The notes under the pieces: generated by a model
Told to the model about the DNA's origin: nothing
Databases searched by the model: none
What the model saw: the letters and a program-made list of their open reading frames with translations, nothing else
Shown here: positions 40,807 through 60,100 of the stretch, one piece after another
How positions within the stretch are numbered: the stretch's first letter is position 1
Layout of the letters: each line of letters opens with the position of its first letter
Position numbers and translations under genes: made by a program
NCBI GenBank assembly: GCA_001179505.1
Contig: CDMY01000499.1
Location: 62,001-126,000 of the forward strand
Direction: 5' to 3'
DNA length: 64,000 bases
DNA from: Vitrella brassicaformis CCMP3155
Taxonomy: Eukaryota; Protista; Chromerida

Positions 40807-43800
40807 CTACTCTTGGTGCGGGAAGAGGATGTCGGCGGCCTCGCTCGTGCCCAGCAGCAGCTCACACGACCTCTTCAGCTCGTCCACAATCGCCGCTCTG
40901 GCTCGGCTGCTCCTCGTCAGGGGCACGCACATCGCCATGAGGGAGAGGTCCGATATGTCATGAGACCGCAGCGACCGCGAGTGGTCGATCGCCTCACGCA
41001 TGGCCCTGGCGCCCTCCTCCTCCCGAAAAGTCTCGTAGAAGATGAAGAGACGCAGGGCATGCAGCCTCGATATCATGAGGGTGTCGATGTTCAGCCCCCG
41101 CACCCTCTGCAGCATCTCGTCCACCTCGCGCAGGTCGCTCGCTTTTCGCCAGCTCTTGGAGTTCAGCCGCTGCTCCACTTGCTCGATGACCGACAGGGCG
41201 TGGGGGCTGTACTGGGGCTCGGGCAGCTGATAGTGGCGTGCTATCGCCCTCTCTTCGGACGGGCTGCGATCGAGCTGGTCCCAGTAGGAGACGGTGACCT
41301 CGTTACCGCGGGCGATGGGGCGGACGGCACGAACAATCAGGAGGTCTTCAACACAATACCTGCGCGCATAAGGCAGAACATATGAGCCTGAGCCGTCTCG
41401 ACAGTATCTTCTGGTGAGCGCGCGGCTTACCAGATGGCATTGCGCTTCATGCCGGCGTGGTTCAACAGCGATGGCAAAGGCCACACACCCCCTGCAGGAC
41501 AACACCAAGGGCATACGCACATGAAAAGCCATCCACCCCATCCATCCATCCATCCATTCTTCGTGTGACATTGTATCACCTGACATGAGCATCGGAGGAA
41601 GCGAGCCCTGGATGGAGGTCTCAATGATATCGTCAGGGGTGCGGATGTTGAAGTCCAGCAATCGGCGGAGGTGGCCAGGGTCGCTGTCCATCTGTGCCAC
41701 AGGCGGACCGAACTCCTCCCCGTTGGGAGAGCCCACTACTCGCGGCAGCAGCGGAAACTCCACAGTCAGCCCGAGACACGTCTCGGGGGCGGGAGCGGCC
41801 CTTCTGATGGACTTCCTGTGGGCCATCACCGTGACGGCCGACGGCTGTCCCCTGCCGGGCGGCAGACAGCACAGCTGAGAGACCAGCCGAGGGTGCCAAA
41901 CGTCACACTGCGAGGCCAGCCGTGCCACCAGCCGCTCGTCGAATCGCCCACTGTCTTGCGACGATGCCCGCTCCACCACGACGGCCTTCTGAACGGTCAG
42001 CAGCTGCCCCACCCGGACATTTGCTGTGGCAATGAGGGCCGGCTGGCTGTCGGGGGCGGGGGGACTGAAACCGACTGGCCCGACGTACTCAGCCACGTCG
42101 ATGGGCGTGGTCCTGCCGAGCTGTCTGTTCTGGGCACTGCCCATTGCTTGTCGGTAGATGGCCGCCCAGTCATAGTTGCCGGTGGCGTTGGCCGCATGGG
42201 TGCGGATGCGCCGCTGCAGTGTGGTGATGTCTGCCGCCATCTGACCCTCCAGCTCCTGGCAGACACACACATACAGGCACACCACTTTCCCCTCTCTGTC
42301 TCACGAGTGTCCCATTGCCAGCTTACGTGATTGGTCAGCGCCTGGACGACGGCATCGGCCGCGTCGAAGAGCCGCTCCGCCAGCAGCCCCTGGCCCAGCC
42401 GAATGAGGGTCTTCTGCTGGATGACACTCAGCTGCTGGCAGGGCCCCTTTAGGCAGCTCAGATGAAATGCCGCGGTGGCACAGCCGACGGCGTCCGGCCC
42501 TCCCTCCTTGATGAGCTTCGGCTGGAGCAGACACGCAGCCGCGTTGCTCAGCAGTGCCACGAGGGNNNNNNNNNNNNNNNNNNNNNNNNNNNNNNNNNNN
42601 NNNNNNNNNNNNNNNNNNNNNNNNNNNNNNNNNNNNNNNNNNNNNNNNNNNNNNNNNNNNNNNNNNNNNNNNNNNNNNNNNNNNNNNNNNNNNNNNNNNN
42701 NNNNNNNNNNNNNNNNNNNNNNNNNNNNNNNNNNNNNNNNNNNNNNNNNNNNNNNNNNNNNNNNNNNNNNNNNNNNNNNNNNNNNNNNNNNNNNNNNNNN
42801 NNNNNNNNNNNNNNNNNNNNNNNNNNNNNNNNNNNNNNNNNNNNNNNNNNNNNNNNNNNNNNNNNTGCCACGAGGGTCGACACGTCAGCGGCCGCCAAAC
42901 CAGCGGTGAAGACGTCACGCGCATCGGCAAATCTCTCGCCGTCCTGCAGCTGCTCTCCCTCCGTCAACGCATCCGTCACTTGCTGCGGTGCGTCGACGAC
43001 CGGCTGGTCTGTCGAGCACAGCTGCGTCATGGCGTCCGTCATGAGTGCCGCGATCGCTCCTTTCGATGGCAGATCGACGTCTTGGTCATCATCGTTGTAA
43101 GCTGCACCGGTGAGCTGCGCGATGAGGGGCTTGTAGACAATCTCAGCAGTGTGCTGGAGGATGGCATACTTGGTGCCTGGCTCGATGGAGTGTGGGGGCG
43201 GGAGGATGCGGAGGGCGGTGGTGACGTCGATGAAGGCAGCGAGGTAGCTGTCGAGCACAATCAGGCACTGGGAGCGGCGAATGAGCAGCTCAGCAATGGT
43301 CTCACGCTCCATGCGGATGCCCTGACACCATAAAGAGAGACAACAGCAGGAAGCCGTGTACATCGACGGCTCAGACGTGACAGTTATTGTGTGTGTGGGC
43401 CACCTTGAGATACGAGCGGTAGGCGTCGAGATACTTGTCGGCCTTGAACAGAGCATTGCCAGCGCTCTTCCATCTCTCGGCAGTGGACGGCACAGACGCA
43501 GAGGCAGATGAGCTCGCAGCAGCAGAGGCCGGAGGAGCAGCACTCCTGCGAAGAGAAAAGCAGCCACAGACAGCGATATAAGACGTCAGAATGATGGTGG
43601 CGCTGTGCATCACGTCGATCGAGTGTGTCTGGCACACGTGTCGGCATTTGACGAAGAGGGCTGCTGAGGACCTTTATCGAGCTGAGCTGACGACGGACTG
43701 CATACACCACAGACAGAGCACGTTATACGACGTTCGTTCATGAGCCCCCACCGTCGTCTTCCTCACCTGGCGGATGCAGCATTGGACGACCGTCTCTCTG

Positions 43801-45039
43801 AGCGCATCTCTCGCTGCGCGTCAATCACGAGGCTCCGGAGGAAGCGCTGATGAGGGCCGGCTGTGGGCATCTGGTCGATGGAAGCGCCATGCTCTAGCAG
43901 CACGCGGACGACGCGCCTCTGCCGTCTGATGGCTTCTTCCGGCGCCCCATCACTAAGCTGCTTACTGAGCAGGGTCCCAGCTGCCATCAGCAGAGACCGC
44001 CCGTTGGCCTGCGTCGATCCCAGACGCTCACACAGCCACTCCACCACTACCGGCGTGGCATTTAATGCCGCGCACTGAAGTGGCGTCATACCGTCCTCGT
44101 TGACCGCATTGAGGTCAGCACCGAAGTCGACCACCAGCTTCAGATATCGGCGCACAAATCTAGCCGACAGCATCGTTGCGGCCTCGTCACTCAGGGCCAT
44201 GCTGTGCAGAACAGTCCCATGACCCTGAAGCTGCTCGCCATGCCTCCCGGTGCGGTAGGACAGGATCCGCTCTGTCGCCAGTGTCCGGTCGTGTGTGAGC
44301 ATGCGGTGGTAGACATCGAGCAGGGCGTCCTCGTACTCGCGACTCGGCTCGTCTGGGAAGGCGCCTGGGAGCACCAGCGCACCAACGCCTCTATGCGCAC
44401 CATGGCGGATCAGCACCTCAGCTGCTGCCACATTGGCATATGCAGTGGCGACTCTGATGGGCCGGACGGGGGGCGTAACACGGATGTGGTCCAATGTCTC
44501 GTTCACATCTGCTCCAGCTTCGATGAGGGCCTCGAGCACGGCTGCTTGGAGCTCGCGAGAGGGCCACCGAGGGAGGTGAAGCGTGTGCACAGCAGACTGG
44601 AGTTCGCCTCGGCGGCTGCCGAATCGCCAAAAAGGCACAGCGCTGTTGGTTGGGTCGTCAATGGCGTAGAAGAGCACCGGCACCGCCGAGAGTGGTCCCG
44701 CACCAATCACCCTCAGCGCGACTCCCACTGTGGCATCAGCCTCATCGTCACCTTCACCGCCACCTCCACACAGACGAGTGACATCACCAGCCGAATTGAA
44801 GGTCCGACACATGACTCCACACACGAGTTGTCGGCTGCGAGTGAGGCCTCGGCTGTCACACTCCAGCGCCATGACGGCGAGCCCCTGCGGCTCCAGCAGC
44901 TCCCTCAAACCGCTCTCGCATGGAAGCTCCTCCCCCCACTGCGCAGGCGCAGACGAAAAACACACACACGTAAGGTGGGATGCAATCACTCGCGCACATT
45001 TTCCAGCTGTTTCCTTTCGCTCCGCACCTGACTAGCCAT
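40807..45039 (-). CDS. Ankyrin-TPR-SET domain protein, copy A (SMYD-like methyltransferase fold)
   Basis: The 12-nt first exon MASQ (45039-45028) is followed by the ANK exon 44938 to about 43770 and a linker exon. Then come TPR segments (AERWKSAGNALFKADKYLDAYRSYLK; LLSNAAACLL) and SET motifs GVWPLPSLLNHAGMKRNAIW and LLIVRAVRPIARGNEVTVSYWD. All junctions checked between the ANK and TPR parts are in frame. Confidence 0.85.
42566..42865. other. Assembly gap (300 N), probably spurious
   Basis: Both flanks share the 11-mer TGCCACGAGGG. Confidence 1.
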
Positions 45040-47360: not shown

Positions 47361-50300
47361 TCATCTACTCGACGACAAGCGCGGGCAGAGGATGTGGAAC
47401 GCCTCGGCCGTCCCGAAGATGACCTCACAGGACTTTTTGATTTCGGTCAGCGCCTCCTCCCGGTCGCTGGCCGAAATCAAAAGGTCCTGTGGAGAGGAGA
47501 GTACTACTGCCAGCTGGCCGATGTCATGGATATCGTAGGATAGCAGTGCACGAGAGGTGGCGACCGACTCGCGAGTCGCCGCCACCGCCTCCGTCACTCG
47601 CCCCGCCGCGAACAGACAGGGCGACCGATATGCCAGCAGCTTCGCGACCAAGATGGTGCGGACATTCAGGCGGCGCACTTGCTGCAGCATCTCGTCCACC
47701 TCACGCAAGGTCTCCTCTCCTGGGTCGGGCTTCTCCTGCATCATCTGCAGCCGCTTCTCCACCTGCTCGATGACCTTCACCGTAAGTGGGCTGTAGGGGT
47801 TGGGCGAATCGGGAAGGTCGAAGCGCCTCGCCAGCAACCTCTCGGCAGCCAGGGTGGTGAAGAGTGGGTCCCAGTAGGAGACGGTGACCTCGTTGCCGCG
47901 GGCGATCGGCCGGACAGCACGGACGACAATCAAATCCCCCTCCTCGAGGATATACCTGCGCGCATCAGGCAGCACAAATGAGCCTGAGCCGTCTCGACAG
48001 TGCCATTCGCGTGGGCCTGGGGCTTACCAGATGGCATTGCGGCTCAGTCCGCCGTGGCTCAATAGCGATGCCAACGGCCACACACCCCCTGCATAGCAAA
48101 GTCATTTCAAACACAGTCCTCTGTCGGCAGCTCTCATTGTTTGTTTCTCACTTGACGCTTTCAGACAGGCGACACCCATGCCTCGCAGGGAATTCTCGGC
48201 GCCGATGTCATAAGCAATGTGGGTCTTGAAGTCCAGTAATCGGCGGAGGTGGTCAGGGGCGCTGTCGATCTGTGTCACGGGAGGACCGAACTCCTCCCCG
48301 GTGGCCGACCATATGAACCGCGGCACCAGGGGAAAGTAGGCTGGAGGCAGCTCTAGACATGTCTCGGGGGCTGGAGGCCCCCCTATGGCGGACGGCTGTC
48401 CCCTGCTGGGCGGCAGACAGCACAGCTGAGAGACCAGCCGAGGGTGCCAAACGTCACACTGCGAGGCCAGCCGTGCCACCAGCCGCTCGTCGAATCGCCC
48501 ACTGTCTTGCGACGATGCCCGCTCCACCACGACGGGCCTCTGGACAATAAGGAGCTGCCCCGGCTGGACATCCTGTGTGGCGACGACGCTCGGCTGGCTG
48601 TCGGGGGCGGGGGGACTGAAACCGACTGGCCCGACGTACTCGCCAACGTCGATGAGCGTGGTCCTGCCGAGCTGTCTGTTCTGCGCACTGCCCATTGCTT
48701 GTCGGTAGATGGCCGCCCAGTCATAGTCGCCCCGAGCGTTGGCCGCGTGGGTGCGGATGCGCCGCTGCAGCGTGGTGACATCTGCCGCCATCTGACCCTC
48801 CAGACCCTGACGGACACACACACAGGGGTCATCTGACTCCCCTTTCTGTCTCATGAGTGTCCCATTGCCAGCTTACGTGATTGGTCAGCGCCTGGACGAC
48901 GGCATCGGCAGCGTCGAACAGCCGCTCCGCCAGCAGCCCCTGGCCCAGCCGAATCAGCGTCTTCTGCTGGATGGCACTCAGCTGCTGGCAGGGCCCCTTT
49001 AGGCAGCTCAGATGAAATGCGGCGGCCGCACAGCCGACGGCGTCCGGCCCTCCCTCCTTGACGAGCTTCGGCTGGAGCAGACACGCAGCCGCATTGCTCA
49101 GCAGTGCCACCAGGGTCGACACGTCAGCGGCCGCCAGACCAGCGGTGAAGACGCCACGCGCATCGGCGTAGCTCTCGACACCCTGCAGCGCCGCGCCCTC
49201 CGTGAGCGCATCCGTCACTTGCTGCGGTGCCTGGACGACCGGCCGATCTGTCGAGCAGAGCTGCACCATGGCGTCCGTCATGAGTGCCGCGATCGCTCCT
49301 TTCGATGGCAGATCGACGTCCTGGTCATCATCGTTGTAAGCTGCACCGGTGAGCTGCGCGATGAGGGGCTTGTAGACAATCATGGCGATCTCCTGGAGGA
49401 TGGCATACTTGGTGCCTGGCTCGATGGAGTGTGGGGGCAGGAGGATGCGCAGGGCGGCCGTGACGTCGATGAAGGCACTGAGGTAGCTCTCCAGCCCGAT
49501 GAGGCACTGGGAGCGGCGAATGAGCAGCTCAGCGAGGTACTCACGCTCCGCTCGGATGCCCTGACACCACACAGACATCACAGCAGGAAGCCGTGTGCAT
49601 CGACGGGGCAGATGTGACAGTTATTGTGTGCGTGGGCCACCTTGAGATACGAGCGGTAAGCGTCGAGATACTTGTCGGCCAAAAACAGAGCATTGCCAGT
49701 GCTCTTCCATCTCTCGGCAGTGGACGGCACAGACGCAGAGGCACTCGCAGCAGGTGCTGCAGCAGCAGCACTCCTGCAAACAGGAGAGCAGCCACAGACA
49801 GTGATATACGACGTCAGAATGATGGTGGCGCTGTCCATCGTCTCAATCGAGTGTGTACGGCTCACGTGTCGGCACTTGACGAAGAGGGCTGACGGGCGTC
49901 CTCGTCGATCGGAGCACCTGACCGGCTGCACACACCACGGCCATAGAGAGCAACCAGTGAGGCATTCGTCAGCCGCCAGTATGGATCTTGTCTACTTACC
50001 TTGTGGATGGAGCAGTGGAGGGCACTGACGGCCCACTCGGGTCAGAGCCACCCGCACCCTTCGCCGCAGACTGCTGCATCCCTTGCTGGATCTCCAGCAC
50101 TAGGTTGCGCGCGTATTGCCAGCTGGAGTTGTCATTGGGCAGGAGGCCGATGTCCGCACCATATCGCAACAGCGTGCGGATGATCTGCCTCTGCCGGTCG
50201 ATCTTCTCGGGTGGGGTTCCCTCTTCGCTGAGCTGCTCCGCGAGGCGATGCGCCGCCGCACCCAGTGCCGTCCTCACCAGAGCCTCAGCACTGTTGTCCT

Positions 50301-51512
50301 CGCTGTTGATCTCGTCGGGCCCGAGCCGCTGACACAGCCACTCGACCACTGGGGGGCCACCAAAGTACGCAGCCATTCTGAGGGGCGAGTTCCCATCATC
50401 GGTTCTGGCATCGAGGGAGGCACCATTGGCCGCCAGCAAGTCGAGATAGCCGCGCATGAAGGCTGCCGACAAGCCGGGCGGGGCCTGAGAGGCACGGTGC
50501 ATGGCCGTGAACCCAGAGAAGCGGCCGCTCGCCAGTGTCGGTTCGTACTCGAACAGCCGACGATAGACTTCGAGCAGGGCTGTCTCGTATGCAGGCGTGG
50601 GATGTGACGGCGCTGCATTTCTGGGGACGAAGCTAATCGCCAGGGCCGAGGATATTCTTCTCGCCCCATCCGACGTCTTGACCAGCGGGGCACCATCCCC
50701 TTCATCCCGCACAGCCGCCCCACTCTCGAGCAGCACCTCGGTCGCCGTGACGTTGGCCATCATGTGGGCCACATTGAGGGGACGGAGGTATGGCGCGCCC
50801 TCATTCACGTCAGCACCGCACTTGACGAGCGCCTCCAGGACATCACGCTGCACTCGGCGAGAGGGCCAGGTGGGGAGCTTGAGGTGCTGGGTCACAGCCG
50901 ACCAGAGGGCAGGATGGCTGTCGAACTCGTCGTCCACTGCGAGCCACAGCACACTCACACGGGCTGGCCGGAGGAGCTGGATCAGTTGCTTCCCTTCACC
51001 GTTCAGAACCGTCACTGGCTGCCTGCTGAATCTGATAGCTGTCTGGGCATCAGCCCCTCTCTCACGACACAGCCGCCATACCTCGCCACCTGTGAGGGTG
51101 CGGCACATGGTCCGACACAGCAGCTCTCGAGATCCATCGGTACTGGTGGCCGTGGGTGCCTCGCAATAGATGTCGAACCTCGCCAGAGAGAAACCTTGCT
51201 GCCCCAACAGACTCTCCACTTGCTCCAAATGAGAAGCGCCGACCCCATTCTGAGCCGCCTGATTATATGGACAGTGAATCGATCCCACATACACACTGAG
51301 TCTCATTCTTCGCAGATCGCGTACCCCCTTGCTGCCTCGTCGCTTCAGGTTTGTCGAGGCCCCAGCAGCGTCAGACGGACGTGTATCCCCGACTTGCGCA
51401 CTGACAATAAGCGAAAACAATAAGGCAATTCCCCCGTTGTTTGTGATTGTGGCGTGTGATTGTGGCGCGTGGCTTACAGAAAGGGCCCGGCAGATGATGA
51501 TGAGGATGCCAT
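47361..51512 (-). CDS. Ankyrin-TPR-SET domain protein, copy B
   Basis: First exon MASSSSSAGPF(L) (51512-51478, GTAAGC donor), ANK exon 51400 to about 50001, then TPR/SET exons closely matching copy A. SET motifs GVWPLASLLSHGGLSRNAIW and DLIVVRAVRPIARGNEVTVSYWD. Confidence 0.85.
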
Positions 51513-51516
51513 GGTG

Positions 51517-54150
51517 TCAACCAGAAGACTGAGAGTCAACAGGACACCATGGCCATGGCATTGCTGCCTCCCCGCGACTGTCTTCCACTGCGCACCTGTG
51601 TGCCCTGGTCGGTGACTCGGACGTCTCTCCATCCATCGCCTGAGACGGCATCCACATGCCGGCAGACTGCCTGTGCCGTCGGCTGCCTCGCCGACCCCCT
51701 GTGATGCCCTCATCTGCCAGCCGCCCAACGCCCCCTGCTGCCTCCGTCTCTTGTGGCTGGTTGCTACTGGTGGTGGTGGTGGTGGTGTTGATGGGCGTGT
51801 TCTTGCCCAGTGGACCATCGTGTGCTGAGGGCGGGAGGGGGGGCGGGGCGGCCGATGAGGATGATGAGGTGCTCGCGCACGCCGCAGCGCCAGACTGGCC
51901 AGAACAGACAGAAAGGCACACAAAGGAAGGATATGCAGCCGCTGCACAGCACGTGTCTATCGGTTCACCTGGCTGCTATGAGTGTCTGGGAGTGCGAGAA
52001 GACCGCCGCCCGCCGATGTGGACCGATTGGAGGCATCCTGAAGCAGACGGGCCCGAGTTTCGGCGGCCTCTTTGATGATGAGCCGCTGGTGCTCCGACAG
52101 GCCGCCCAGCAGGATGGCAAACATGCTGATGCACGCCTCGGTCACCTCCTCGAAGCCCACTGCCCCAGCCCACACGACGGGCAGGTCAGCCGAGCCGAAT
52201 GCACCGTGAGGTTCCAGGCTAAGACCCACACGCTCGCTACCGGCGGAACCGCAGGTAGCCTGAGATGCCGCCCTCAGCTGCCGCAATGCGAAGCGCTCCT
52301 CGGGTTGGCGGGGACGAATAAGATCTGAGAGCTGTGTGTCAGTCTTGATGAGTGCCAGAGTGACGGTCAGTGCGGTGGTGAGAGGGACGGGGCGGTGGGG
52401 TTGGGGTGGTGCGTGGGGTAAAGCTACGCCGCGAGCAGCTCGCTCGTTGGCCACAGAATCTGTCACACACAGAGAAGAAAGACAGATGTACACGTGTGGA
52501 CGTGCTGCCCTTCCCTTGCCCGCCTGCATGGCCGCCTGTTTGCATACCTGCGATTTGCCGCAAGAAGGCCTGCATCCTCTTGCCGGGGTCTATGGGGTCT
52601 GTCGGACGAACAAGCTCCGCCCACACAGGTGAGGCCACCAGGCCATCCACCACGGCCCGCCCAGCTGACAGTGCCGTCTGCAGTGCCGTGTCTGTCGCGG
52701 CAGCCGCCCACTGAGTGTGGTGCAGGCCGGTGATCTCGAAGACAAAGCCGATCGTGTCCATCGAACCACCAGGAAAGGACGCTTTCTTGACCACACTGAC
52801 GTTGGTCGACTCGACCTTCTTGCTCTCCTTCTTGGCCATTGTCTTGGCTGTCTGTGCCGCCTGCTTGACTTCTGCCGAGAGCTGCTGCTGCTGCTGCTGC
52901 TGTGGGGCGGAGGGGGGAGGGCACTCGATGATGGACGGAAGGCAGCGGGGCGAGGGGGATGAGGAGGGAGGCCGTTGGGACATCTCTCGCTGTATGTCCG
53001 ACACCAAGCTGCGTGCTTGCTGGGTCTCCAGCACTAGGTTGTGAGTGCGCATGTGGTCAGGGGACGCACCATGCTGAAGCAGCAGGCGGACGACCTGCTT
53101 CAGTCTGTCGATCTCGTCCGGGCGCTTCTCGTTCAGCATATAACTAAGGTGCACGCCCGCGAGTTCAATTGGCAAGAGATCCTGCCCATTTCTCTTGTTG
53201 ATCTCCTCCCTCACAAGCCGCTCGCACAGCCACTCCACCGCACTCGGTGCACCCGCCATGACGGCGAAATCAAGGGGCGTGACGCTTTTTGCACCCTTGG
53301 CGGTGAGGGAGGCGCCGTGTTGGGCCAGCAGGTCTAGGTACGAGCGCATGAACTCCGACGGCAGTGACCGCGACGCCGCCATGTGCATGGGGGTGGCCCC
53401 GCTGTCCTTGAGCTGCTCAGTCGCCAGTGTCCGGTCGTGGTCGAACAGCCGGCGATAGACGTCGAGGAGGGAGCTGTAATACTGTGGGCCGGGGGATGGG
53501 GGAAGGGCACTTCGAGGCGGGAGGTAGCCCAGCTGCAGGCCGCGCACAGCCGCCTTAGCCTTGAGCAGCACCTCCACAGCCGTCGGGTTGGCGCAATCGC
53601 GTGCCCACGCGAGGGGTGCCAGGTTGCCGCGGTTCACGTCTGCCCCATTGGCGATGAGCGCCTCGAGCACCTTCCGCTGTGTCTCACGAGATGGCCAGGG
53701 AAAGAGGCGGAGCTCCTTGTCGTTCACATTCAAGACACATACAGGGCTGTCGACCCCGTCAATGGCGATGGTGAGCAAGCCGTAGGGCTCCACTTGATCG
53801 CCCTCTTTGGCCACGCTAATGTTCATGTCAGCATCAGCTCCTTTCTCATGGCAAAGCCTTGCGATTTGGGAGTCTGGCTCGGGTGCGCGGCACATGATGA
53901 CGGACGCCAGCCGGCGGTTCGCGGGGCTGTTGCGCTCACTGCCATCCCTGCCGCTGATCGTGGTGAGAGAGAAGACCTGCAGACTGAGCGGGGCATCAAG
54001 TTGCCGCTCGTACGATCGCCCCTCGTCAGTCTGAATGGACAAAGCAAACAGACGAGGAAGAGATCTCCCCTTTTCCTTTTCCTCCTTCCCACTGACCTGG
54101 CTGGACGGCGGCATGCGATCTGCCGACGAATGAGAGGCGGCAGCCGCCAT
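51517..54150 (-). CDS. Ankyrin-repeat protein with unrecognised C-terminal domain (gene C)
   Basis: ORF 52339-54150 has the family ANK head (WPSRETQRKVLEALIANGADVN, GATPMHMAA, VTPLDFAV). It splices in frame (ATCGCAG|GTATGC) to DSVANERAARG...VTEACISMFAILLGG and a low-complexity last exon ending at TGA 51519-51517. Confidence 0.8.
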
Positions 54151-54330: not shown

Positions 54331-54572
54331 CGGCTCTCCAGCGCTCGTCGATGAGTGAATCAACGCTGAAGGACCAGCAGCTACACCACAGCCGGACTCC
54401 AGGCCACCACAGCACTATACACTCCTCCAATCCTCCTTTCTGACTCACAAAGGTGCGAGCTTGAAAGAATTTCAGCTCGCACTGGATGCAGATCGGAAGA
54501 CCACACACAGACAACAGTGCGTTGCTAGGCCGTGGCACGGAGAGATCACCGCCTTGTTTCAAAATTGCCTCG

Positions 54573-57199: not shown

Positions 57200-60100
57200 A
57201 TGTCGGCCGCCTGCTCCCAGTTTACTGAGAGGAAGAGTTGCTTGAAGAGTTATGTCTTCGACAGCACCAATCCTGCCACTACGGAGCTGGCGACCATGAT
57301 TGCTTGCCGAACTCTAACTTCGACGGAGGATGTCGCTCGTCTCGTCGCGGCAGGAGCGGATAGCAAGGCGGACCTCTATATTATCTTCGGCTCTGACGAC
57401 AAGAAGCTTGTCAACTTGCTGTCTTTGGCCATCGATAGTGAGAACTTCACCAATCCTGTCTTTTGGCATGATGACAAGCAGCTGAACCTCCCAATTTGGC
57501 CCTCTCGCGAGCTGCAACGGGTGGTGCTCGAGGCGCTCATCGCCTATGGAGCAGACGTGAATGGCGGCAGAGCTGAGCCCCATCCCCTTGTGGCGGCTGT
57601 CCTGTTTGCAAACATGACGGCTCTCGAGGTGTTGCTCAGCGCTGGGACGGCGACACGGGGGCTGCGACTAGCCAGGCTCCCACCTCTACCAGAACGCCGT
57701 CCAGGGATCACTCTACAAAAGCCGAGCCGACAGTACGAGACCGCTCTGCTGTCTGTATATCGCCGATTGATGGAGCATGACCCGGCACTCGCCCACGAAC
57801 AGCTCAGTGACGGAATGCTCTCCATGCACTCGGCAGCTGCAGCGAATGCGTCGTTTCTACTCTCGCCAGAGTTCATAGGGGACTATCTGGACATACTGGC
57901 CGCTTACGGCGCGTCTCCCACCGCGAAGAGCGCCCAGGGATTCACGGCACTCCACTGCAACACGATTAAGGGTGCATCGTCTGTAGTAAGATGGCTGTGC
58001 GAAAAGCTGGGGCCTGAGGAGGTCGCGAAGGAGACATCAGAAGATGGTACTTTGGCAGCCGCCGGCGTTCATCTCAATGAGCTGCTGAGACAGAAGGCCT
58101 CTCCCAATGTGATCAACCGACACAAGCAGGCGATCCGTATTCTGCTTGCCCACGGTGCATCCATCGCATCACTCCCGACAGGCACACCAAAGGCGCACCA
58201 CGTGCGTAGGCTGTTACAAGACATCCAAGAAGAGATGCAGCCGCCGGCGAGTGACGCAGCACAGCAACAATATCAAGGGGGGAGAGATGCGGTAACGACG
58301 ATTCGGAAGACTTACCCGCAGCCCGCTCAGATGGAGGAGAAGATATCGTCTTCCTTGGAGAACTGTATCATTGTCCATCAAGGCCGGAACAGCCCGACCC
58401 TTCCCACGATTTTAGTCACTAGGGAACTCGCAATCAAGATCACAAATCGAAGCCTCACATCAGCCGACGACGTGGCGCGTCTCGTCGGAGGAGGGGCCGA
58501 TGTTACAGCGGGTGTCAGTCTTCGTGTCGACTCTGAGTCGTCCTACGGACCCGTTAGTTTGCTCACTGCTGCCGTCAAAAATACCTACACGTCTGTTGAT
58601 GTGTGGAGAGACGCGAGTGGGGAGATGATAGAAGAAGTGGTGAAGGACTTGAAGCTGCCTGCGTGGGAATCCCGTGAGACACAGCGGGCAGTCGTTGAGG
58701 CCCTGATCGCTGCTGGAGCTGACATCGACGGTGGATCGTTTGAGCATAGTGGGCCCATTCATGACGCCTGCCGGTATGCCAACGTGATGGTTGTTGATGC
58801 CTTGCTGACGGCTGGCGCGGCGACAGTCGGGATGCGCTTGGCTTCTCTCCCAGCATCTAATGAAGGCATTCCCTCCCAGCCGAGCCGTGAATACGAGGAT
58901 GCTCTGCTAGACGTCTATCGCCGAGTGCTTAATTGTAACCCCTCCCTCGCCAGCGAGCAGGACGAGAACGGTGTCACTCCTATGCACAGCGCGGCGCTGG
59001 AGAGGGTGTCGCTTTCACTCTCATGCGACTTCATGCGCCTCTATCTGGACCTGTTAGCTGCGCACGGCGCCCCGCTTACCACGAGAAACGCACGGGGAGA
59101 AAGCCCACTTGACATCGCTGTGGCTGAGGGAACTCCGGATGTTGTCGAGTGGCTATGTGGCAAGCTGGGGCCTGAGGAAATCAACAGGAAGGATCCCACC
59201 GGGGCCAAATGGCCAATGTACACCGCGATCGGCAGCCTTTATATGGGGCTGAGAGACAAGGCCCCGCTCGAGGAGATAGACAGAGCCAAGCAAGTGATCC
59301 GCACGCTCCTGGAACATGGTGCATCAGTTGACACTTTCCCCACCAAGACGGCATTGCAGCGCCGCGTTCGCAGCTACGTCCTGGAGATCCAACAAGACAT
59401 CTGCAAAGGGAGCCACACACAGCAGCAAGAGATTGAAGCTGTAACGGCCGCCAAGATCGCCGAGGAGCTCATAGCTGAGGAGGCGAAAGAGAAGGCCAAG
59501 AAGGCCAAAAAGGGCGGTGGGAAGGGCAGCAAGACCGGCAGCGGGACCCAGCCTGCATCTGCTCGGCGAGTTCCGGTGTGTGAGGGGGTTGGTCAAGACA
59601 AGGAGCTGTCGGTGCCGTCCGTATCATCAGACAGCAAGTCGGCAGGCATACTTACAAACGATGGCCTTACAAACGATGGCGAGACAGACGAGTGGCCGCT
59701 TCCCACTTCATCTGCCGATCCTCAAAGGTAAGCGCATGCACACACAGTGAAGACGCTCTATTGGCGTGGGTACTCTCTCTCGGTCTGTGCTGTCTGTCTG
59801 AAGCGTGTGCACTGGTGTCCCTTCATCATCGTGTAGTGTTGCATCTGCTGTGCCTGCCCCCGCCACTCCCATGGCCGAGGCCAGCGATGGCGAGTTCATA
59901 CCCGTGGTCTGCAGAAAGAAGAACAAGAAGAAAGACAACAAACAGCAACGACAGCCGCTTGTCGCCACATGCCAGGAGCCGTACAACCAAAGACAGATAC
60001 TCAAGTAATTTGAGGCCCATTGATGCTCTGGCTGGCCACTGTATGCGTCTTGTCTCCCCTCTGTGTTTTGCGCCATGCAGGACTGATGGTGTTGCCACCT

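What the first reader, a model, noticed from the sequence alone, without database searches (positions are those of the whole stretch)
51401..51595. Gene C stop is 4 nt from the gene B ATG, and an in-frame splice can fuse the two genes
Seen (minus strand): gene C's last exon ends TGA (51519-51517), then CACC, then the ATG of gene B's first exon (51512, Kozak-like context, GTAAGC donor at 51477). Separately, a donor CACAG|GTGCGC at 51595 inside C's last exon is phase 2, as is B's acceptor TTGTCAG|T at 51401. A 195-nt intron would therefore give one ANK-X-ANK-TPR-SET protein. There is no room for a 3' UTR, polyA site or promoter between the two ORFs. Inference: this could be a bicistronic transcript with termination-reinitiation or leaky scanning, an alternatively spliced fusion, or a B promoter embedded in C's coding exon. 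Any of these is unusual for a nuclear gene pair.
Basis: partly seen in the sequence, partly recalled or inferred. Interest (0 to 1): 0.75.

Follow-up and report, generated by a model that had tools for sequence, protein, structure and literature searches.

The report
One spliced gene, not two
The "stop codon 4 bases before a start codon" lies inside a 51-base micro-exon of one already annotated 1954-residue ankyrin-ankyrin-TPR-SET gene of the alga Vitrella brassicaformis, so the TGA is read out of frame, the ATG is an internal methionine, and the case is ordinary.

Summary
The split into "gene C" and "gene B" does not hold.

- **Public model:** CEM18269.1 (P0009, 1954 aa, Vitrella brassicaformis CCMP3155) maps exactly onto the minus strand as 13 exons, with 12 GT-AG introns of 63-92 nt.
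- **Junction:** the donor at 51595 joins an acceptor at 51529 (67-nt intron). A 51-nt micro-exon (51528-51478) follows, then the 77-nt intron 51477-51401. The protein reads ...RAHS-LLVDTMASSSSSAGPFL-AQVGDTR.... TGA is read as GTT GAC ACC and the ATG is an internal Met.
- **Paralogues:** three other loci in the genome keep the frame open across this junction, each by different arithmetic. One has no TGA and no first intron, so the frame is continuous. One has no ATG. In one the TGA is out of frame even without splicing.
- **Indels:** against the nearest paralogue they come in multiples of 3 in the exons but not in the introns.
- **The 195-nt intron:** it is in frame only because the micro-exon is 51 = 3x17 nt. 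No annotated paralogue uses it.
- **The motif:** TGANNNNATG occurs at chance frequency in the window.
- **Not available:** direct junction reads could not be obtained.

The scan had already described a related broken three-ankyrin copy on other DNA of this genome (s1-242768).

The parts
47361..54114 (-). Coding span of one gene, from ATG at 54114 to stop TGA at 47363-47361. It has 13 exons and 5862 coding nt = 1954 codons. Public protein CEM18269.1 / UniRef100_A0A0G4FTQ0.
   Evidence: P0009 matches the frame translations of the window exactly, block by block. All 12 introns are GT-AG and 63-92 nt long. Exon lengths sum to 5862 nt. Identity of P0009.
52548..54030 (-).
   Evidence: Pfam Ank families match. 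It is 38% identical to the second module.
51969..52459 (-). Exon 3: X region with no family assignment.
   Evidence: Exact block aa 501-664 of P0009. No Pfam hit.
51596..51894 (-).
   Evidence: Block aa 665-763. Indels against paralogue L022 are +6, +9 and -3, all multiples of 3.
51529..51595 (-). Intron A, 67 nt, CACAG|GTGCGC ... CTCTCAG|T. It shifts the reading frame by +1.
   Evidence: Two 1-nt indels against L022. The homologous intron is 69 nt in L022 and 70 nt in L023, and is absent from L021.
51478..51528 (-). Exon 5: 51-nt micro-exon that completes Ser764 and encodes LLVDTMASSSSSAGPFL. It contains both the 'TGA' and the 'ATG'.
   Evidence: It is 92% identical to L022 with no indel. The residues upstream of the Met are conserved in the paralogues.
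51517..51519 (-). The 'TGA', read out of frame as part of GTT GAC ACC (Val-Asp-Thr).
51510..51512 (-). The 'ATG', which is internal Met770 of the 1954-aa protein.
   Evidence: It is replaced by AAT (Asn) in paralogue L023.
51401..51477 (-). Intron B, 77 nt, TTTCT|GTAAGC ... TTGTCAG|T.
   Evidence: The GTAAGCC donor is conserved in all four loci.
51325..51400 (-). Exon 6, 76 nt (AQVGDTR...RRGSKG).
51259..51324 (-). Intron C, 66 nt, in frame and free of stops, so a plain ORF scan reads straight through it.
   Evidence: It carries a +17-nt indel against L022. It is spliced out in the public models P0009 and P0008.
50000..51258 (-).
47364..49925 (-). Exons 8-13: TPR-like region and SET-like domain.
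   Evidence: The Pfam SET hit is weak (E 5.5e-4, 20.8 bits against a cut-off of 22.4).
54454..54481 (.). Two copies of AGCTCGCA, one on each strand, about 340 nt upstream of the start codon, in the gap facing a plus-strand ORF.
   Evidence: An earlier unchecked note (s1-205606) calls this a Vitrella promoter word. There is no copy near 51400-52000.

Best explanation
Window 54114-47361 (minus strand) is one nuclear gene of Vitrella brassicaformis CCMP3155. It has 13 exons and encodes a 1954-residue protein with two paralogous ankyrin modules, an unassigned X region, a TPR-like region and a weak SET-like domain. At the place in question, exon 4 ends at 51596. A 67-nt intron (51595-51529) is removed, a 51-nt micro-exon (51528-51478) is included, and a 77-nt intron (51477-51401) is removed. 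In the mature message the TGA is read as GTT GAC ACC and the ATG is Met770, an internal residue. There is no intergenic spacer, so no 3' UTR, polyA site or promoter is needed there.

Shown: the exact mapping of the public protein, the splice-site letters, and frame conservation across four paralogous loci. Inferred: that the mRNA made in the cell uses these junctions, because no junction reads could be obtained here.
For: 1. P0009 (CEM18269.1, 1954 aa) was the top hit of the representative search, with the 'gene B' ankyrin exon at residues 807-1225. Its sequence reads ...ESPTRAHSLLVDTMASSSSSAGPFLAQVGDTR....
2. P0009 matches the window exactly in 13 blocks. All 12 introns are GT-AG with CAG acceptors and are 63-92 nt long. 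The exons sum to 5862 nt = 1954 codons.
3. The whole C+B unit recurs at three other loci at 66-85% DNA identity.
4. L021 has an 8-nt deletion that removes the 51595-type donor. Its frame runs without interruption through ...HSLLSPFAAASSHGPSTMSSSSAAWPSS to the GTAAGCC donor. It has no TGA and carries an 18-nt in-frame insertion upstream of the ATG. Its public model P0154 is also fused, at 1989 aa.
5. L023 has a 70-nt intron A that shifts the frame correctly, and its micro-exon reads SPLDDTNPSSSPSAGLF with no ATG. The public model P0010 uses it.
6. L022 has a 69-nt intron A. The TGA there is not in the upstream frame whether or not the intron is spliced. The public model P0008 reads SAHS-PLVDTMASSSSSAAPFL-APVAD.
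7. Against L022, indels are multiples of 3 in exon 4 (+6, +9, -3), the micro-exon (none) and exon 6 (+3). They are +1, +1 in intron A, -17 and +1 in the intron before it, and +17 in intron C.
8. The genome paper states that the models came from Augustus with strand-specific RNA-seq used as intron evidence (PMC4501334).
Against: No transcript or junction read for this locus could be examined. Records of the window's own genome are withheld from the contig look-up. No MMETSP peptide clusters with P0009, and none turned up in the length ranges searched. The public model is therefore a prediction whose RNA support at this particular intron is unverified.

L022 and W are nearly identical around the micro-exon, so they count as one witness. 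Minor isoforms (micro-exon skipping, retention of intron A) are not excluded.
Confidence: 0.9

Rival explanations
1. There are two separate genes, or two cistrons on one RNA. Gene C ends at TGA 51519-51517 because intron A is not removed. Gene B starts 4 nt later at ATG 51512 by termination-reinitiation, leaky scanning or an internal promoter.
For: In the window the unspliced exon-4 frame does reach this TGA. The ATG sits in a CACCATGG context. In L023 the unspliced frame also ends at the homologous TGA.
Against: The arrangement is not conserved. L021 has no TGA and a single continuous frame through the ATG. L023 has no ATG. In L022 the TGA is out of frame. The stretch 51595-51529 carries two 1-nt indels against L022, so it is not under coding constraint. 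The residues upstream of the ATG (S-P/L-L-V/D-D-T) are conserved in the ATG's frame. The motif occurs at chance frequency. No AGCTCGCA word lies near the junction (a weak argument). From general knowledge, reinitiation after an upstream ORF of about 760 codons is inefficient without special signals.
Confidence: 0.03
2. It is one gene, but the main junction is the reader's 195-nt intron (51595>51400), which skips the micro-exon and gives ...RAHSAQVGDTR....
For: The GT and AG letters are present and both sites are phase 2, so the frame is kept. The micro-exon is 51 nt (3n), so it could act as a cassette exon.
Against: A 195-nt intron is more than twice the longest of the gene's 12 introns (63-92 nt). 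None of the four public paralogue models skips the micro-exon. In L021 the micro-exon is fused to exon 4 and cannot be skipped by this donor. The micro-exon is the best-conserved segment against L022, at 47/51 identical with no indel.
Confidence: 0.04
3. Retention of intron A is a regulated event that produces a truncated ANK-X protein ending at TGA 51519-51517 (or a transcript destined for decay) alongside the full-length protein.
For: Retention puts the TGA in frame in the window and in L023. Short introns are commonly retained at some level (general knowledge).
Against: Retention would keep the full frame open in L022, and the intron no longer exists in L021. A conserved retention-to-stop switch is therefore not supported. 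No transcript data are available.
Confidence: 0.03

Closest known systems
Public gene model CEM18269.1 / UniRef100_A0A0G4FTQ0 ('SET domain-containing protein', Vitrella brassicaformis CCMP3155, 1954 aa)
   Same: It is this locus. The protein maps exactly onto window 54114-47364 on the minus strand, including the micro-exon.
   Different: Nothing differs. The only gap is that I could not check the RNA-seq hints behind the model at this intron.
Short internal exons (micro-exons) flanked by short introns in intron-rich protist genes
   Same: A 51-nt exon sits between 67-nt and 77-nt GT-AG introns. Its length is a multiple of 3, so skipping it would also keep the frame.
   Different: No evidence here of regulated inclusion. 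In one paralogue (L021) the upstream intron has become coding sequence.
Termination-reinitiation and closely spaced stop/start cistrons (calicivirus TURBS, influenza B M1/BM2 UAAUG; named from general knowledge)
   Same: Only the appearance: a stop triplet a few bases before an ATG.
   Different: Here the stop is not in the reading frame of the spliced message. The pair is not conserved in paralogues, and the upstream frame continues into the downstream one.
   Same: The second half of this protein has the same ANK-TPR-SET layout as the neighbouring gene at 40807-45039. Fifteen matches (about 13 loci) to its SET-like exon lie in the genome.
   Different: This copy and three paralogues carry an additional upstream ankyrin module plus the X region. 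The SET hit is below Pfam's cut-off.

Membership tests
Single spliced gene (public model CEM18269.1) | The protein maps colinearly and exactly onto the DNA, with canonical splice sites at every break. | tested here: met
   13 exact blocks. 12 GT-AG introns of 63-92 nt. 5862 nt = 1954 codons.
Single spliced gene (public model CEM18269.1) | The reading frame across the junction is conserved in diverged paralogues. | tested here: met
   The frame is open in all four loci by different arithmetic: introns of 67, 69 and 70 nt, or none. All four public models cross the junction.
Single spliced gene (public model CEM18269.1) | Indels come in multiples of 3 in exons but not in introns. | tested here: met
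   W against L022: exon 4 +6, +9, -3; micro-exon none; exon 6 +3. Intron A +1, +1; intron C +17.
Single spliced gene (public model CEM18269.1) | Transcript reads span both junctions. | not testable with these tools
   Own-genome records are withheld. No MMETSP peptide was found for this locus. The genome paper says RNA-seq intron hints were used genome-wide.
Bicistronic pair with termination-reinitiation | The stop codon of the upstream ORF is in frame in the mature mRNA. | tested here: not met
   It is in frame only if intron A is retained. In the spliced model TGA is read as GTT GAC ACC.
Bicistronic pair with termination-reinitiation | The stop/start arrangement is conserved in relatives. 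| tested here: not met
   L021 has no TGA, L023 has no ATG, and in L022 the TGA is out of frame.
195-nt intron (micro-exon skipping) as the junction | GT..AG with compatible phases. | tested here: met
195-nt intron (micro-exon skipping) as the junction | Intron size typical for the gene, and used in related models. | tested here: not met
   195 nt against 63-92 nt. Used in 0 of 4 public paralogue models.
Ankyrin-repeat protein (Pfam PF12796, PF00023, PF13637) | Score above Pfam's gathering cut-off. | tested here: met
   Ank_2 55.8 bits against 27.3. The best-scoring stretches fall in two regions, 212-297 and 1078-1128. PDB ankyrin and DARPin hits.
SET-domain methyltransferase (Pfam PF00856) | Score above Pfam's gathering cut-off. 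| tested here: inconclusive
   20.8 bits against a cut-off of 22.4, E 5.5e-4, residues 1592-1784. Catalytic residues were not examined here.

The most novel reading that the evidence does not exclude
In the window copy only, a fraction of transcripts keeps intron A, so ribosomes end an ANK-X protein at TGA 51519-51517 and some reinitiate 4 nt later at the CACCATGG Met. One mRNA would then yield separate ANK-X and ANK-TPR-SET proteins beside the full-length fusion. A milder variant is that the internal Met is the fossil start codon of a once separate ANK-TPR-SET gene. The neighbouring single-module paralogue starts MASQ in a 12-nt first coding exon.
Probability: 0.03. Interest if true: 0.55.

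Novelty: already known. Interest (0 to 1): 0.08.

Why it matters
It matters little biologically, because it clears a false lead. The apparent 4-nt gap between two nuclear genes comes from reading open frames past a splice donor and missing a short acceptor. The locus is one gene that the public annotation already holds.

The case is a useful caution for ORF-based reading of intron-rich protist DNA. Three things misled here. Exon frames often stay open for tens of codons past their donors (1-69 codons in this gene, and through two whole introns). Two introns are in frame and stop-free, so ORFs run through them. A 51-nt exon can carry both a 'stop' and a 'start' in other frames.

The one point of mild evolutionary interest is that the 67-nt intron is coding sequence in one paralogue.

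Tried and rejected
- **Word search with the 'gene B' ankyrin ORF (474 aa):** no hit. The public protein (1954 aa) lies outside the tool's length range, so this blank meant nothing.
- **Word search with the 'gene C' ORF (603 aa):** it found only paralogues and one MMETSP peptide, not the window's own protein. This was the first hint that the public model is longer than 1055 aa.
- **Cluster look-up for transcript-derived members of P0009, P0010 and P0008:** each cluster has a single member.
- **MMETSP peptide P0002:** it maps at 100% identity to another locus, C292:58290-59288. The transcriptome strain therefore matches the genome, but it gives nothing for this junction.
- **PDB sequence search:** ankyrin hits only.
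- **Promoter word AGCTCGCA, from an earlier unchecked note:** present upstream of the gene and absent near the junction. With 7 matches against 3 expected this is a weak argument, and I use it only as such.
- **Ancestral start codon idea:** the neighbouring paralogue begins MASQ, but three residues cannot carry that claim, so I rejected it as unsupported.
- **Joined spliced model:** I did not build or search one of my own. Exons were searched by reference, and the only full-length proteins used were the public records returned by the tools (P0009, P0154, P0010, P0008). Exon boundaries were set by matching P0009 to the frame translations, with a check of a few codons across each intron.
Full report
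**Observation**

- TGA is at 51519-51517, CACC follows, and ATG is at 51512-51510.
- GTAAGC starts at 51477.
- CACAG|GTGCGC has its G at 51595.
- TTGTCAG| ends at 51401.

The three-frame view confirms that the frame before 51595 and the frame after 51401 are the same. A 195-nt intron would therefore be in frame. The two large ankyrin ORFs are paralogues at 38% identity, and both have Pfam ankyrin hits.

**Organism and context**

I verified this. The window is contig C499:62001-126000 of a 72.7-Mb, 1064-contig genome. All protein relatives carry the name Vitrella brassicaformis CCMP3155.

The ankyrin module is a large family, with at least 98 matches in the genome. The pair 'C-like module followed by B-like module' recurs at three other places on the same strand and in the same order. 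I fetched them as L021 (C499:271500-281499), L022 (C292:65500-75499) and L023 (C356:321200-331199, used as its reverse complement). BLASTN shows the whole 6.8-kb unit is duplicated at 66-85% identity.

A public model on the L022 paralogue (P0008, 771 aa) reads ...SPTSAHS-PLVDTMASSSSSAAPFL-APVADASPS.... In that model the donor homologous to 51595 is joined to an acceptor CTCAG| that lies just upstream of TGGTTGACACCATGG.

The same acceptor exists in the window, with its AG at 51530-51529. This gives the following structure:
- a 67-nt intron at 51595-51529
- a 51-nt exon at 51528-51478, read in the frame of the ATG (S LLVDTMASSSSSAGPFL)
- the 77-nt intron at 51477-51401

In that frame the 'TGA' is GTT GAC ACC.

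**The window's own public protein**

The word search could not see the window's own protein because of its length filter, so I ran the representative search with the 'gene B' ankyrin ORF.
- The top hit is P0009, 1954 aa, with the query at residues 807-1225.
- Its sequence holds both ankyrin modules and reads ...ESPTRAHSLLVDTMASSSSSAGPFLAQVGDTRPSDAAGASTNLKRRGSKGAAQNGVGASHLEQ....
- It is CEM18269.1 / UniRef100_A0A0G4FTQ0, 'SET domain-containing protein'.
- It matches the frame translations of the window exactly in 13 blocks.
- The 12 gaps resolve to GT-AG introns of 66, 88, 74, 67, 77, 66, 74, 92, 80, 70, 63 and 72 nt.
- The exons sum to 5862 nt = 1954 codons, followed by TGA at 47363-47361.

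'Gene C' and 'gene B' are therefore exons 1-4 and 5-13 of one annotated gene. The ATG is Met770.

[quoted passage not shown] Whether this particular intron had such a hint I could not check.

**Independent test with the paralogues**

If C and B were separate genes, nothing would keep their frames joined. All four loci do keep them joined, each by different arithmetic.

| Locus | Intron A | Frame change across intron A | TGA | ATG in micro-exon | Public model |
|---|---|---|---|---|---|
| Window | 67 nt | f0 to f1 (intron B then returns it to f0) | in frame only if intron A is unspliced | present | P0009, 1954 aa |
| L022 | 69 nt | none | in neither the spliced nor the unspliced upstream frame | present | P0008, 771 aa |
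| L021 | none (8-nt deletion removed the donor) | one open frame throughout | absent | present | P0154, 1989 aa |
| L023 | 70 nt (CCCAG\|GTCAGC ... CTCAG\|) | f1 to f2 | in frame only if unspliced | absent (AAT, Asn) | P0010, 1246 aa |

Further details per locus:
- **L021.** The upstream exon runs in one open frame through ...ESPTAARSSWATRGRGVHSLLSPFAAASSHGPSTMSSSSAAWPSS to the conserved GTAAGCC donor. It has an 18-nt in-frame insertion upstream of the ATG. Its public model reads exactly this.
- **L023.** The micro-exon reads SPLDDTNPSSSPSAGLF. The public model starts further upstream and uses the intron and the micro-exon.
- **All loci.** The protein alignment shows the residues before the Met (H/P-S-L/P-L-V/D/S..D/S-T) aligned in all four.

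**Indel signature**

In the DNA alignment, scored by feature, the window against L022 shows:
- Exons: exon 4 has +6, +9 and -3; the micro-exon has none; exon 6 has +3. All are multiples of 3.
- Introns: intron A has +1 and +1; the preceding intron has -17 and +1; intron C has +17.

The micro-exon, including the part upstream of the ATG, behaves as coding. L022 is nearly identical to the window around the micro-exon, so it is not an independent witness for the TGA/ATG letters themselves. L021 and L023 are.

**Chance**

TGANNNNATG occurs 42 times in the window against 45.9 +/- 7.0 in shuffles. Reading past donors in the exon's frame gives open stretches of 1-69 codons in this gene, and two whole introns (66 nt each) are stop-free and in frame. 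An exon-4 read-through of 26 codons that ends 10 nt inside the next exon is therefore unremarkable.

**Promoter check**

An earlier unchecked note says AGCTCGCA marks Vitrella transcription starts. The word occurs on both strands at 54454-54481, about 340 nt upstream of the start codon, and nowhere near 51400-52000. With 7 matches against 3 expected in the window, this is only a weak pointer. It agrees with one start site upstream of exon 1.

**Rivals**

- **Bicistron, reinitiation or internal promoter.** This needs a stop in frame and a conserved stop/start pair, and both fail in the paralogues.
- **The 195-nt intron as the main junction.** It is in frame but 2.1 times longer than any intron of the gene. 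No paralogue model uses it, and it is impossible in L021.
- **Regulated retention of intron A.** It would give a stop in the window and in L023, but not in L022, and the intron is gone in L021.

None of these can be excluded as a minor isoform without RNA data.

**Function of the protein**

This was not the question, so only briefly. Pfam's best ankyrin stretches fall in two regions (212-297 and 1078-1128). The SET hit is below threshold (20.8 bits against 22.4). PDB hits are ankyrin and DARPin only.

**Limits**

- No transcript evidence for this junction could be obtained.
- I built and searched no joined spliced model of my own. Exons were searched by reference and the full-length proteins were public records returned by the tools.

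**Verdict**

The letters are real, but the feature is not a gene boundary. This is one already annotated gene with a 51-nt micro-exon, which is ordinary.

Noticed in passing
L021:3720-3775 (G000:C499:275219-275274) against window 51595-51529: The 67-nt intron A of the window is coding sequence in paralogue L021. An 8-nt deletion removed the donor, and further indels (+1, -18, and +18 in the micro-exon) keep one open frame, which the public model P0154 reads through. With L023 as the more distant copy still holding the intron, this looks like an intron turned into exon after duplication.
   Followed up: partly
L022 (G000:C292:65500-75499): This colinear ANK-X-ANK-TPR-SET unit is split in the public annotation into three proteins: P0001 (436 aa), P0008 (771 aa) and P0007 (935 aa). 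The tail of P0001 is in the other frame of the CAG/poly-Q tract compared with the window. The locus also carries an insert of about 1 kb holding a second X-like copy (VDTIGFDF...). It is either a broken copy or contains assembly errors.
   Followed up: partly
window 54096-54031 and 51324-51259: Two annotated introns are exactly 66 nt, in frame and free of stops.
   Followed up: yes
window 54454-54461 (-) and 54474-54481 (+): AGCTCGCA sits on both strands 20 nt apart, in the gap between this gene and a plus-strand ORF that starts near 54486.
   Followed up: partly
window 57275-59401 (+): Two ankyrin modules of the same family lie in one 849-aa open frame. A public 842-aa RING-type domain-containing protein (P0004) on this contig is a relative, but I did not map it to this ORF. 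Tandem ankyrin heads in one protein are therefore not peculiar to the gene studied.
   Followed up: no
G000:C292:54565-59288 (-): The MMETSP transcript peptide P0002 (358 aa) maps at 100% identity over residues 1-333 to a C-like ankyrin module about 3 kb upstream of a SET-like exon, with no B-like ankyrin module found between them. This may be a family member with only the C-type head, and it is expressed.
   Followed up: no
window, within ORF 42548-43567 (-): A run of N (an assembly gap, seen as X in the ORF translation) interrupts the TPR-like part of the neighbouring ANK-TPR-SET gene.
   Followed up: no
window 45039-44950 (-): The neighbouring single-module ANK-TPR-SET gene appears to start with a 12-nt first coding exon, ATG GCT AGT CAG|GTGCGG (MASQ), followed by a short intron. 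This recalls the MAS... of the micro-exon, but it is too short to argue homology.
   Followed up: partly
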